This document shows positions 53,224-56,112 of a stretch of 64,000 bases of DNA, in pieces. A program made the translations under genes and the position numbers. The DNA lies in assembly GCA_001179505.1 (NCBI GenBank), contig CDMY01000375.1, positions 1-64,000 on the forward strand, written 5' to 3'. A model generated the notes under the pieces. It saw only the letters and a program-made list of their open reading frames with translations. It ran no database searches and was not told the origin of the DNA. Position 1 is the first letter of the stretch. Each line of letters starts with the position of its first letter. The DNA is from Vitrella brassicaformis CCMP3155 (lineage: Eukaryota; Protista; Chromerida).

Positions 53224-53925
53224 TTAGAAAGAAAAATGGAGTATCCTGCCCTCCGCCACGTTGTAGATCTCATGCATGAGATGTGGAGTGGTGACCACCC
53301 GCACCCCCGCAATTGTCTCCTCCTCCTTGGTGTCGCCCATCTGGAAGAACGTCACATTGCGCGAGGCCAGGTGGTCGAGCGACGGCTGCAAGTCGCCCAG
53401 GAGGAAGGGGAGTTGGTCCTCAGGCGTGCTGGTCAGCAGGGGCCCGCAGCCGTCAGGTGAGTTGCACCACACCACCACCTTGATCCCACTGTCAGCCTGA
53501 AAGACACGAATGAGACAAGGGGACACACACACACACAGAAAGACAGACACCCGTACATTGTCATGTTAGCACCCCTCTACCCACTATGTACCTACCAGCC
53601 GGCGCGCCACTTGAATGCCTTTGCCGACGCCTCCCTCACTCAGCTGCACCGCCGCGCCGTCGGCCTTGTTCTTCATCGTCTCCTTCATGCGATGACTCTC
53701 TGCCAAGGCAAATGAGCCCACCACCAGACTTGCCACAGCCAACAGAGCAATGAGGCCGATAATCATGTCGCGTTTGGGCGATGGAGGGGTGCTGGGCGGC
53801 TGCGTGTAGTCGCCCCTGAGGCCCTCTGCCGAACCCTCGCTGGCGAGTCTGGTCCTTTTGAGAGAAGTGTCGGTGGAGATGGCCTGGGAGGTGAGCACGT
53901 CGACTTGCACGTTTCCGGGCCTCAT
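53224..53925 (-). CDS. Type II single-pass membrane protein, unknown function
   Basis: MRPGNVQVD...KRDMIIGLIALLAVASLVVGSFALA (TM)...VARRL|ADSGIKVVVWCNSPDGCGP...ILHFSF*; one phase-0 intron. Confidence 0.65.
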
Positions 53926-54009
53926 GGTGAATGTGGTAGATGAGGGAGCAGCAGCGGTTTCGGACCGAGAATTGCGAGCTGCAACGGCAAGAAGCGAAGA
54001 AAGGCCGCG

Positions 54010-55086
54010 ATGTTGAGGCCTTTGCTGTGCCAGTTGGCGTCCAGCTGTCGGTGTTTGTATGTGCAGCAGCGTTCGCTCTTCAGCCTCTCCCCACATGTGC
54101 GTTTCTCATCCATGCCTGAGTTCGCAAAGCCGCCCACACGGCTCGACGCCCTGCTGCCCGTGTGCCTCAAGGCAGGTAGGTGCTTACGTGCGCACCATCA
54201 GAGCCCTGACCGCACCGAGGGAGGGGGATTGATGAATGCATCTCCGCACCTCGCGCCTCTGCTGTTTTGCAATGTATGTGCGGTGTGGTGTGGTGTGTGT
54301 GTGTTGATGCAGATGGCAACATGACGGCTCGTTTGTATCCTGACTGGGACGCTCGCCTGGGCACCCCCACGATAGAGCTGGCCCTCATCAGCGCAGAGCC
54401 GCCCGAGTTGGCTCCCCCCTCCAACACGCAGTCGCAGGCAGGAGGCGAGCAGGAGGGCATGCAAGGCTCGGTGGCCACCACATGCGCCTTCATGAGGCCT
54501 GCGTTCAAGATACGGGTACGCAGCCGGGGTTGCCACGGGGGCGGTGCATCTCTGTGACTGGAGGCGCATCAATCCAGCCTGTGCTTGTTGTGTGGTCTGG
54601 TGTGGTGGGTGCGTCCATCTGTCCATGTGTCCCTGTTTCAGTTGGATGGTCCGATGGTAGCGCGTTTGTTGGCGGTGGACGGTTGGGGCGTGAGCAAGCA
54701 GACGGTCAAGGACAAGGAGTCGGAGCTCATGTACGGCGTGCGGCAGGGGTGTGTGTACCTCAAGATGAAGGAGCGCAAGATGGGCAATCCCGGCTGGGGG
54801 GGCAGGGGCGGCGGATACGGCTATAGGAGCGGAGGGGGCGGTGGTGGGGGTGGGGACAAGGAGGGCGAGTCGCTGGCGACGCGGCTGGCGCCTGGCGAGG
54901 CGGTGGTGCTGCGCCGCATGCTCAAGTTTGCCCTCCCCAACATGCTCGGATGGACCACTGAAAACACCAAATACCAAGGTACACACACATTCACACACTT
55001 CCGTTGTTGCCTTGTGAATATCGCGTGCGGTTTTCTGTGTGTCAATGTGCTGGGCAGCTGGCTGGAAGGCCGCCCAGACCACCTAA
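54010..55086 (+). CDS. Whirly-like ssDNA/RNA-binding protein with probable mitochondrial presequence
   Basis: R/S/L-rich, acid-free N-terminus (MLRPLLCQLASSCRCLYVQQRSLFSL). C-terminal ESLATRLAPGEAVVLRRMLKFALPNMLGW resembles plant Whirly ESIYIPITRAEFAVLxSAFxFxLPYLxGW. The KGKAAL motif is not conserved, and the last exon is uncertain. Confidence 0.55.
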
Positions 55087-56112
55087 GTAGCACCGAATGA
55101 CCGACCTTGACACACAGGACATCACGATAGCGGCCAAGATGGATATGCATGGAGGTAGCCCGCTTTAACAGAGTACACGTACAAAGAGAGACGAATTGAT
55201 CCATCGATCCATGGATGGATGGATGGATGGATGGATGGATGGACAGACAGACAGACAGGCAGGCGAACACCCTGCGTGGGTGTGTCCGTAGCATTGAATG
55301 CATTGTGTGCATGTATCAACGTTCTTGCATCGCCGTATGAGGGATGGATGGAGAGAGAGAGAGAGAGAGAGTTAGGGGTGTACATACACATATACAGAGA
55401 GGGGCTGATAAAACACACATACATACAGGTATGTAAGGTAGATGTGCGTGTGCAAATAATGGGGTCAGTGCACACAGGGACACGCAAGACGAACCTCGTG
55501 TGTGTGGACAGAGGTGTTTGTGTACAGAGTCGCGCTCTTGTCCGATTGCATCAATTCATGACACTCCACGCGGTCTTCCGACGAGAATTCTCGATTTGAG
55601 AGATTTGAGACGGCGAGACGGCTTGAATGATTTTCTCTTGACAGATTCTATCGTTTTCGAACCAGCGACTTCGACTGGCGCTGCGGGTGTTCACACACCC
55701 TCCCGTACAGGCAGACGTCGCCTGCGTCGGTGTCCCCATCGCCGCCTCATCATCGCTGCCCTTCCCGCCAGCAAAGACGAGAGGATCATGTGCCGTTGCT
55801 TTGGCGGGGCACTCTTCATTCGAATGGTGCAGGGCCCAGACATCCAGCTACCCGGCCGCAGCGGGTGTTTGGGCCATCTGTCGCCACCGTTGGACACCGT
55901 GCAGCTGACGACACTGCAGCCCGATTGAGAGTGGACTACTCCCCAGACGAGGAGTGGACAGGCATGGGCAATCAGTTGCGGTGAGGTCACCCGCCTCCAG
56001 CAAAAGCTGTATGACGCCCTGCAGTGGACCGCTGGGCAGTGGACCGCATAGTCTCTGAGGGGTTGGGAGCGGGAATTGGCGACGATGACCGACAGACGCA
56101 CCCGCCACCTTC

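What the first reader, a model, noticed from the sequence alone, without database searches (positions are those of the whole stretch)
54010..55086. Whirly-like protein predicted for the mitochondrion of a non-plant
Seen: a presequence-like N-terminus, a C-terminal helix matching the Whirly signature, a plausible beta-strand pattern and an RGG-like insert (GWGGRGGGYGYRSGGGG). Established: Whirly proteins are plant/green-algal organellar ssDNA binders that suppress microhomology-mediated rearrangement; trypanosome MRP1/2 share the fold and bind RNA; myzozoan mtDNA is reduced and fragmented. Inference: a Whirly-fold factor for mtDNA stability or fragmented-rRNA handling in this lineage.
Basis: partly seen in the sequence, partly recalled or inferred. 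Interest (0 to 1): 0.7.

Follow-up and report, generated by a model that had tools for sequence, protein, structure and literature searches.

The report
Orphan Whirly-like protein gene in Vitrella
A real, spliced and transcribed gene of the alga Vitrella brassicaformis encodes a 244-residue protein with no detectable sequence relatives; it most likely has the Whirly fold of single-stranded DNA/RNA binders and probably goes to the mitochondrion, but both fold and location rest on predictions.

Summary
A four-exon gene at 54010-55086 (+) is confirmed by spliced transcript contigs and equals an "uncharacterized" 244-aa protein of Vitrella brassicaformis. The Arg-rich, acid-free N-terminus, the Gly/Arg/Tyr-rich insert and the C-terminal helix are all present.

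The Whirly reading is supported but not proven.
- Against or silent: Pfam, PDB and a full HMMER scan of 1.84 billion proteins find no relative. Both AlphaFold models were too poor to use. The tetramer test gave no answer.
- For: the ESM Atlas feature search puts Whirly/MRP clusters on top. The Atlas's own model has Whirly, PurA and PC4 neighbours, also for residues 40-170 alone. A bacterial Whirly profile built here, which hits plant Why2 at 1e-8, aligns to the C-terminal strand and helix (P 8.5e-4; 0 of 200 shuffles). StWhy2 is among four PDB hits of the C-terminal 47 residues.

My odds are about 0.8 for the Whirly-like fold and about 0.55-0.6 for mitochondrial targeting. DNA versus RNA as the ligand is open.

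Whirly-type proteins outside plants are already known (Tetrahymena TIF1, trypanosome MRP1/2, bacteria), so this is a divergent, lineage-restricted variant with low-complexity inserts. Interest is moderate.

The parts
53991..54009 (+). 5' UTR (minimum extent)
   Evidence: The spliced 906-nt contig of run X6 begins at 53991. There is no ATG before 54010, and an in-frame stop lies at 53941-43.
54010..54175 (+). Exon 1 (residues 1-55 plus the first base of codon 56). Residues 1-36 (54010-54117) form the presequence-like N-terminus.
   Evidence: Composition: 4 Arg, 0 acidic residues, no hydrophobic core.
54176..54312 (+). Intron 1, 137 nt, GTAGGT..CAG
   Evidence: The joint is seen in contigs of X1, X2 and X6.
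54313..54515 (+). Exon 2 (rest of codon 56 and residues 57-123). It holds putative strands up to residue 80, the low-complexity insert 81-112 (54387-54482) and the start of the strand AFKIR.
   Evidence: Strands come from low-confidence DSSP.
54516..54641 (+). Intron 2, 126 nt, GTACGC..CAG
   Evidence: The joint is seen in contigs of X1, X2 and X6.
54642..54978 (+). Exon 3 (residues 124-235 plus the first base of codon 236). It holds helix PMVARLLAV, the hairpin ELMYGVRQ/GCVYLKMK, the Gly-rich insert and the C-terminal strand and helix.
54783..54854 (+). Gly/Arg/Tyr-rich insert, residues 171-194 (GNPGWGGRGGGYGYRSGGGGGGGG).
   Evidence: The stretch is present in the mRNA contig X6 without a gap.
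54846..54953 (+). Whirly-like C-terminal strand and helix, residues 192-227. The core helix is residues 208-227 (54894-54953) and ends in FALPNMLGW.
   Evidence: hhalign against bacterial PF08536 profiles; shuffle control; phmmer hit to StWhy2 residues 142-164; pLDDT 73-86 in the MSA-aided model.
54979..55057 (+). Intron 3, 79 nt, GTACAC..CAG
   Evidence: The joint is seen in a contig of X6.
55058..55086 (+). Exon 4: rest of codon 236, residues 237-244 and stop TAA.
55087..55194 (+). 3' UTR (minimum extent)
   Evidence: The X6 and X8 contigs run to 55194. An (ATGG)8 repeat follows at 55211-55243.

Best explanation
This is a single-copy, transcribed nuclear gene of Vitrella brassicaformis. It encodes a lineage-restricted protein whose mature part (about residues 40-244) adopts a Whirly-type fold: two beta-beta-beta-beta-alpha units ending in the family's C-terminal helix. 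Two low-complexity loops are inserted, at residues 81-112 and at the Gly/Arg/Tyr-rich residues 171-194.

The N-terminal 30-40 residues most likely act as a mitochondrial presequence. By analogy with plant WHY2, the mature protein would assemble through its C-terminal helices and bind single-stranded nucleic acid on its beta-sheet surfaces without sequence specificity, with the flexible Gly/Arg/Tyr loop adding contacts. I favour ssDNA of the fragmented, recombining mitochondrial genome as the ligand, with RNA not excluded.

Shown: the gene model, its transcription, its orphan status, the N-terminal composition and the C-terminal motif match. Inferred: the whole fold (about 0.8), the mitochondrial location (about 0.55-0.6), oligomerisation and nucleic-acid binding.
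For: Gene and transcript:
-.

Fold, from database-wide retrieval:
- The ESM Atlas feature search puts three Whirly/MRP clusters on top (scores 0.89, 0.88, 0.87, with 190-192 of 256 features shared).
- The Atlas's own model (pTM 0.55) has neighbours carrying PurA, Whirly (TM 0.73 by the bacterial 124-aa row, 115 residues aligned) and PC4/YdbC.
- Residues 40-170 alone, without the C-terminal helix, again find clusters part-labelled PF08536: TM 0.59 by query for one in which 24% of members carry PF08536, PurA 0.48, PC4 0.45.

Fold, from targeted tests:
- Profile A1 of bacterial PF08536 proteins hits StWhy2, AtWHY1-3 and p24 at 1e-8 to 1e-5.
- A1 aligns to P0001 residues 192-227, ending at the same final Trp, with score 29.4 and P 8.5e-4. 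No shuffle out of 200 reached it; the highest was 21.3.
- A broader profile, A2, gives the same region at P 0.004.
- phmmer of residues 198-244 finds StWhy2 among only four PDB hits.
- hhalign at low mact and MAFFT each place FKIRLDGPMVARLLAVDG on the family's strand 4 and helix 1, colinearly; MAFFT and hhalign on the full-length sequence also place ELMYG on the conserved LFH strand.

Targeting:
- The N-terminus is Arg-rich, acid-free and lacks a hydrophobic core, whereas chromerid plastid import needs a signal peptide first (PMC6668581).

Context:
- Vitrella mtDNA is fragmented and scrambled, with a cob-cox1 fusion and rRNA pieces (PMC8554336).
- The only bacterial-type SSB locus found in the genome appears to carry a plastid-type signal.
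Against: - No Pfam family matches at E<=10 for the exons, the whole protein or its parts.
- No Whirly appears in a whole-protein PDB search, and the N-terminal part finds nothing in PDB.
- phmmer over 1.84 billion representatives finds only the protein itself.
- The sequence signal is confined to about 36 residues. It would not survive correction for all families (hhalign probability 24% and 8%; PDB E-value 1.7, with two unrelated PBP2x hits scoring better).
- The best Atlas feature score is below 0.9, which the tool calls a lead only. Its structure search rests on the same language model.
- The AlphaFold models are poor (pLDDT 37 and 52.5) and find nothing in PDB.
- The KGKAAL ssDNA-binding motif of higher plants is absent.
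- The tetramer test gave no answer.
- No targeting predictor was available; location rests on composition alone.
Confidence: 0.45

Rival explanations
1. The protein has a Whirly-type fold and is mitochondrial, but it works on RNA, like trypanosome MRP1/2. It would anneal or chaperone the many small rRNA fragments and processed transcripts, with the Gly/Arg/Tyr loop acting as an RGG-type RNA-binding element.
For: Two of the three top Atlas feature clusters carry the MRP family (PF09387) and come from Euglenozoa. MRP1/2 adopt a Whirly-like fold and bind guide RNA (PMC2377264). Plant WHY1 also binds RNA (PMC3630183, PMC9070903). Vitrella mitochondria have fragmented rRNA genes and a fused cob-cox1 transcript that needs processing (PMC8554336). 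RGG or Gly-rich stretches are typical of RNA binders (general knowledge).
Against: The only significant sequence match is to the Whirly proper helix, closest to mitochondrial ssDNA-binding StWhy2. PF09387 does not match. MRP works as a heterotetramer of two paralogues, whereas this gene is single-copy. The insert holds only one true RGG.
Confidence: 0.15
2. The protein has a Whirly-type fold but sits in another compartment. It could be in the plastid nucleoid (like plant WHY1/3) through a weak signal peptide, or in the nucleus or cytosol (like Tetrahymena TIF1, PC4 or PurA). In those cases the N-terminus is not a mitochondrial presequence.
For: Vitrella has a plastid with its own genome. Plant Whirlies are plastid, mitochondrial or dual-targeted (PMC9070903). 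The alveolate homologue TIF1 is nuclear (PMC2377264). No targeting predictor could be run. Residues 4-18 are mildly hydrophobic and are followed by a Ser/Arg-rich stretch. Published mitochondrial predictors reach only about 70-86% precision on Vitrella reference sets (PMC6668581).
Against: The highest hydrophobicity over 12 residues is 1.24, against 2.48 for the signal-peptide-like run upstream of the Vitrella SSB exon. There is no Phe-type cleavage motif after a hydrophobic core. There are no acidic residues in the first 36 positions and 4 Arg, as in mitochondrial presequences.
Confidence: 0.2
3. The protein is not a Whirly-fold protein. It is a fast-evolving, partly disordered orphan whose amphipathic C-terminal helix resembles the Whirly helix by chance or convergence, and the language-model hits follow that resemblance.
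For: No curated model and no database-wide sequence search sees the family. The Atlas score is below 0.9 and its model has pTM 0.55. The tool states that shuffled proteins reach 0.9 or more in 4-10% of cases. AlphaFold does not fold it. About a quarter of the protein is low-complexity. Unrelated PBP2x scored better than Why2 with the C-terminal query.
Against: It did so again for residues 40-170, which lack the helix. Two aligners place further elements colinearly with the family. The helix match ends at the same terminal Trp of the domain, preceded by a strand.
Confidence: 0.2

Closest known systems
Plant mitochondrial WHIRLY2 (StWhy2 3N1H, AtWHY2 4KOP; Pfam PF08536)
   Same: It is a small nuclear-encoded protein with an N-terminal organelle-type leader. 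Its C-terminal helix has the same pattern (E..V[LM]R....FALP...GW), with about 9-10 of 23 positions identical to StWhy2. The order of strands and helices is predicted to be colinear with the domain. Its setting is an organelle genome prone to recombination.
   Different: There is no Pfam match. The KGKAAL motif is absent. Two low-complexity inserts (residues 81-112 and 171-194) lie inside the domain. No sequence relatives are known. Tetramer formation and ssDNA binding are untested.
Trypanosome MRP1/MRP2 guide-RNA binding proteins (2GIA; PF09387)
   Same: They are mitochondrial, basic proteins with a Whirly-like fold and no sequence similarity to plant Whirlies (PMC2377264). Atlas feature clusters carrying MRP rank among the top three.
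   Different: MRP acts as a heterotetramer of two paralogues in kinetoplastid RNA editing. Here there is one gene, no PF09387 match, and no RNA editing was found in the chromerid mitochondrial genomes (PMC8554336).
Tetrahymena TIF1
   Same: It is a published distant Whirly homologue in an alveolate that binds single-stranded DNA (PMC2377264). This shows the family is not foreign to the lineage.
   Different: TIF1 is nuclear and works at rDNA replication origins. No sequence link between it and the Vitrella protein was found, and none could be tested directly here.
Bacterial PF08536 proteins (Verrucomicrobiota, Kiritimatiellia)
   Same: Their domain end aligns with the Vitrella C-terminus. A bacterial Whirly cluster gives the best TM-score by target (0.73) to the Atlas model. 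They also lack KGKAAL.
   Different: They are 150-220 aa long, without a leader and without Gly-rich inserts. They have clear Pfam matches and a conserved FDW...LFH pattern that the Vitrella protein lacks or has only in degenerate form.
PurA and PC4/YdbC ssDNA/RNA binders
   Same: They share the beta-beta-beta-beta-alpha building block. They are structural neighbours of the Atlas model (TM 0.37-0.48).
   Different: They have a different number and arrangement of units. There is no sequence signal at all and no Pfam match. PC4 was not found in the genome by six-frame search.

Membership tests
Whirly (Pfam PF08536) | A match to the family HMM at or above the gathering score (23 bits) | tested here: not met
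   There are zero Pfam families at E<=10 for each exon, the whole protein and five sub-ranges. The six-frame search of the genome with PF08536 also finds nothing.
Whirly (Pfam PF08536) | The Whirly fold: two antiparallel four-stranded sheets, each followed by a helix | tested here: inconclusive
   The neighbours of the ESM Atlas model are Whirly, PurA and PC4, both for the whole protein and for residues 40-170. The AlphaFold models made here were too poor (pLDDT 37 and 52.5) and their PDB searches were empty.
Whirly (Pfam PF08536) | The conserved C-terminal strand and helix that close the domain and end in G-W | tested here: met
   hhalign against two PF08536 profiles gives P 8.5e-4 and 0.004, in register with the domain end. 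No shuffle out of 200 reaches the score. phmmer hits StWhy2 residues 142-164, with FALPxxxGW identical.
Whirly (Pfam PF08536) | The KGKAAL ssDNA-binding and higher-order assembly motif of higher plants | tested here: not met
   The candidate position reads CLKADGNMTARL (residues 52-63) and retains only one Lys. Green-algal, Klebsormidium and Marchantia Whirly-like proteins also lack the motif (PMC9070903), as do the bacterial members. Its absence therefore argues against 'higher-plant type', not against the fold.
Whirly (Pfam PF08536) | A homotetramer formed through the C-terminal helices | tested here: inconclusive
   Complex prediction with four copies of residues 40-244 returned 'no answer' (score 0.00, fold uncertain).
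Whirly (Pfam PF08536) | An N-terminal organelle-targeting peptide | tested here: inconclusive
   The composition fits a mitochondrial presequence: 4 Arg and 0 acidic residues in 36 positions, no hydrophobic core, and a possible R-2 cleavage site at RF|S, residues 31-33. No trained predictor and no experiment were available.
Whirly (Pfam PF08536) | Binding of single-stranded DNA | not testable with these tools
   This needs gel shifts with purified protein.
MRP1/MRP2 (Pfam PF09387) | A match to the family HMM, and two paralogues forming a heterotetramer | tested here: not met
   There is no PF09387 match in the protein or the genome. The gene is single-copy with no paralogue. The only link is Atlas feature similarity.
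PurA (PF04845) / PC4 (PF02229) | A match to the family HMM; three PUR repeats for PurA, or a single beta-beta-beta-beta-alpha unit that dimerises for PC4 | tested here: not met
   There is no Pfam match, and PF02229 is not found in the genome. Structural neighbours reach only TM 0.37-0.48. The predicted two units followed by a Whirly-type terminal helix fit Whirly better.

The most novel reading that the evidence does not exclude
Vitrella mitochondria use a Whirly-fold protein with a built-in Gly/Arg/Tyr loop as their main single-strand binding factor, in place of a bacterial-type mtSSB. It governs recombination of the scrambled linear mtDNA, or the annealing of fragmented rRNAs. Equally diverged counterparts exist unseen in Chromera, dinoflagellates and apicomplexans.
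Probability: 0.15. Interest if true: 0.7.

Novelty: new variant of a known kind. Interest (0 to 1): 0.42.

Why it matters
How myzozoans (chromerids, dinoflagellates, coccidians) copy, recombine and express their tiny, scrambled mitochondrial genomes is largely unknown, and few nucleoid proteins are identified. A Whirly-type single-strand binder would be a concrete candidate, because plant Whirlies restrain microhomology-mediated rearrangement of organelle DNA.

The find also adds to the evidence that the 'plant-specific' label of the Whirly family is outdated.

Its reach is limited. The protein has no detectable relative even in other alveolates, and every functional statement is still inference.

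Tried and rejected
1. Pfam on single exons, the whole protein and sub-ranges; PHROGs; phmmer against PDB with the whole protein and with residues 44-168. All gave nothing or Gly-rich noise.
2. Word-index search with the exon-3 ORF, and a full HMMER scan of 1.84 billion representatives. Both found only the protein itself.
3. The own genome has no paralogue. The metagenome scan found no relative.
4. AlphaFold2 without an alignment gave pLDDT 37, and its Foldseek search of PDB was meaningless.
6. Complex prediction with four copies returned 'no answer', which is no evidence either way.
8. hhalign of the N-terminal part alone, and of a loop-deleted core made inside a script, gave no significant extension beyond the C-terminal region. 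It also gave alternative placements of 'PDW' against the family's FDW, so the register of the first sheet stays open.
9. Eukaryotic Whirly sequences could not be added to the profile because no tool gave them a reference.
10. The joined exon sequence was never typed or sent to a tool. Exons were searched by reference, and the identical database protein P0001 was used afterwards. The exons were joined only inside a script, to check identity with P0001.
11. Literature searches linking Whirly to apicomplexans, Toxoplasma or alveolates found no relevant paper. Two searches with loose term settings were wasted.

Full report
**What is there.** The window belongs to Vitrella brassicaformis CCMP3155. 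Earlier notes of this scan say so, and an exact protein match confirms it. At 54010-55086 on the + strand lies a four-exon gene: 54010-54175, 54313-54515, 54642-54978 and 55058-55086, with stop TAA at 55084-86. All three introns are GT..AG.

Contigs of three public runs carry the spliced form. Introns 1 and 2 are seen in three runs and intron 3 in one. One 906-nt contig covers 53991-55194 without any difference from the window, so the Gly-rich stretch is part of the mRNA.

I searched the exons by reference. I then searched the open frame around exon 3 with the word index. That returned database protein P0001, 244 aa, 'unnamed/uncharacterized', which is identical to the spliced model. All later work used P0001. 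The joined sequence was never typed or handed to a tool. An in-frame stop at 53941-43, with no ATG before 54010, fixes the start codon.

- N-terminus: residues 1-36 have 4 Arg, no acidic residue and 7 Ser/Thr. There is no hydrophobic core; the highest Kyte-Doolittle mean over 12 residues is 1.24.
- Insert: GWGGRGGGYGYRSGGGG is residues 174-190, inside a Gly-rich run at 171-194. It holds one true RGG.
- C-terminal helix: residues 208-227 (GEAVVLRRMLKFALPNMLGW) match Whirly, as detailed below.
- Strand pattern: this could be checked only through low-confidence models.

A second low-complexity insert lies at residues 81-112.

**Sequence searches.** Curated and database-wide searches do not recognise the protein.
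- Pfam gives no family at E<=10 for any exon, the whole protein or five sub-ranges.
- PHROGs gives noise.
- phmmer against PDB gives Gly-rich noise.
- A full HMMER scan of 1.84 billion representatives finds only the protein itself.
- The genome has no paralogue, and six-frame searches find no PF08536, PF09387 or PF02229.
- A metagenome scan finds no relative.

At the sequence level the protein is an orphan, so nothing can be said about its distribution in Myzozoa.

**Evidence for the fold: database-wide retrieval.** The ESM Atlas feature search put three clusters on top that carry PF08536 and/or PF09387 (Whirly, MRP). Their scores are 0.89, 0.88 and 0.87, with 190-192 of 256 features shared. 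All ten best named hits fall in one family or clan. The scores are just under the tool's 0.9 line, so each is formally a lead.

The Atlas's own model of this protein (pTM 0.55, pLDDT 0.61) has as neighbours PurA, a bacterial Whirly cluster (TM 0.73 by the 124-aa target, 115 residues aligned) and PC4/YdbC. To see whether the C-terminal helix alone drives this, I repeated the search with residues 40-170. The structure search again returned a cluster of which 24% carries PF08536 (TM 0.59 by query), PurA (0.48) and PC4 (0.45). One of the three best feature hits is part-labelled PF08536.

That is hard to ascribe to chance. Both Atlas searches do rest on one language model.

**Evidence for the fold: targeted tests.** No tool offered eukaryotic Whirly sequences by reference, so I built a profile from bacteria.
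- A Verrucomicrobia 16S probe gave genome handles.
- A phylum-wide search with PF08536 found six loci in 401 genomes.
- Two word searches gave 947 and 119 protein clusters.
- Profile A1 (16 sequences) hits StWhy2, AtWHY1-3 and p24 in PDB at 1.6e-8 to 1.4e-5, so it is a true Whirly profile.

hhalign of A1 against P0001 aligns the last 36 profile columns, the final strand and helix, to residues 192-227. Both end at the terminal Trp. The score is 29.4 and P is 8.5e-4. Two hundred shuffles of P0001 gave mean 12.6, sd 2.3 and max 21.3; the reversed sequence gave 13.2. The broader profile A2 (34 sequences) gives the same region at P 0.004.

phmmer of residues 198-244 against 177,635 PDB sequences returns four hits at E<=10. 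Two of them are StWhy2 (E 1.7), aligned at its residues 142-164, with FALPxxxGW identical.

These tests show that the resemblance is real and in the right place. It would not survive correction for all families, and two unrelated PBP2x chains scored better.

Outside this region the posterior confidence is low. Even so, hhalign at low mact and MAFFT independently place FKIRLDGPMVARLLAVDG on the family's strand 4 and helix 1. MAFFT, and hhalign run on the full-length sequence, also place ELMYG on the conserved LFH strand. The register of the first sheet remains open.

**What failed.**
- AlphaFold2 without an alignment gave pLDDT 37.
- AlphaFold2 with the MAFFT alignment to bacterial Whirlies gave pLDDT 52.5. 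That alignment makes the result circular by design.
- Neither model found anything in PDB.
- The four-copy complex prediction returned 'no answer'.

The fold is therefore supported at about 0.8, not demonstrated.

**Where it goes.** Chromerid plastid proteins enter through the ER with a signal peptide followed by a transit peptide (PMC6668581). This N-terminus has no hydrophobic core. For contrast, the open frame just upstream of the single bacterial-type SSB exon found in the genome carries a run with a 12-residue hydrophobicity of 2.48, followed by SAWS|F, the plastid pattern. The splice link of that SSB model is not verified. The Arg-rich, acid-free leader, with a possible R-2 cleavage site at RF|S (residues 31-33), fits a mitochondrial presequence. 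No trained predictor was available. I put mitochondrion at 0.55-0.6, plastid at about 0.15, and nucleus or cytosol at about 0.25.

**How it most likely works (inference).** After import and cleavage, the domain folds as two beta-beta-beta-beta-alpha units. The two low-complexity stretches would be surface loops, one between strands 3 and 4 and one before the last strand. It would oligomerise through the C-terminal helix as Whirlies do, and bind single-stranded nucleic acid on the sheets, with the Gly/Arg/Tyr loop adding flexible contacts.

Vitrella mtDNA consists of fragmented, scrambled molecules with a cob-cox1 fusion, a divergent cox3 and rRNA pieces, probably shaped by recombination (PMC8554336). 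Plant Whirlies bind organelle ssDNA and limit error-prone repair (PMC3245945, PMC9070903). I therefore favour ssDNA. An MRP-like RNA role is the main functional rival (PMC2377264).

**Comparison and novelty.** Reviews call the family plant-specific (PMC9070903), but that no longer holds.
- Tetrahymena TIF1 is a distant homologue, and MRP1/2 share the fold (PMC2377264).
- PF08536 proteins occur in Verrucomicrobiota and Kiritimatiellia.
- Atlas clusters labelled Whirly come from diatoms and euglenozoans.
- The KGKAAL motif is absent here, as it is in green-algal and liverwort Whirly-like proteins (PMC9070903) and in the bacterial members.

The protein fails the Pfam criterion, so I do not file it as a member of PF08536. 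I file it as a probable remote homologue that works like one: a new variant of a known kind, with inserts inside the domain and no detectable kin.

No paper in the library links Whirly to chromerids or apicomplexans.

**Verdict.** Interest is moderate. This is a testable candidate for an organelle nucleoid or RNA factor in a lineage where few are known. It is restricted to one species as far as can be seen, and it is supported only in silico.

Noticed in passing
L132 (G000 contig C176:29695-32820), minus strand: SSB exon at 1474-1650, upstream ORF at 1696-2100: This is the only bacterial-type SSB (PF00436) locus found in the Vitrella genome by six-frame search. The open frame just upstream carries a strongly hydrophobic signal-peptide-like run (LYSVALLVVLPL) followed by SAWS|F, the look of a plastid bipartite signal. 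If the model holds, no bacterial-type mitochondrial SSB has been found in this genome. The splice link is not verified, and short exons may hide other copies.
   Followed up: partly
window 53587-53976: Transcript contigs of a neighbouring gene end at 53948-53976, only 15-45 nt from the 5' end of the Whirly-like mRNA contig (53991). A minus-strand ORF at 53587-53925 encodes a stretch with one transmembrane segment and a sub-threshold DUF6223 match (E 0.014). This may be a head-to-head gene pair with a very short shared promoter region. The strand of the neighbouring transcript is not shown by contigs.
   Followed up: partly
window 55211-55243: A perfect (ATGG)8 microsatellite lies directly after the last base covered by the mRNA contigs (55194). 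Read assemblies break there.
   Followed up: no
L126, L127, L130, L131 (Verrucomicrobiota genomes G353, G235, G337, G046); proteins P0002-P0240: Two distinct bacterial families carry the Whirly domain. One is about 150-170 aa long (Luteolibacter-like). The other is about 180-220 aa long (Kiritimatiellia) and ends in a hydrophobic tail instead of the terminal Trp. They were found in 6 of 401 genomes sampled and in hundreds of metagenomic clusters. A profile of them hits plant Why2 at 1e-8, at odds with the 'plant-specific' label used in reviews.
   Followed up: partly
ESM Atlas neighbours of P0001: The nearest structural neighbours of the Atlas model are several clusters of unannotated tailed-phage (Uroviricota) proteins of 115-234 aa, some part-labelled PF08536. 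Phages may carry an unrecognised family of Whirly/PC4-like single-strand binders.
   Followed up: no
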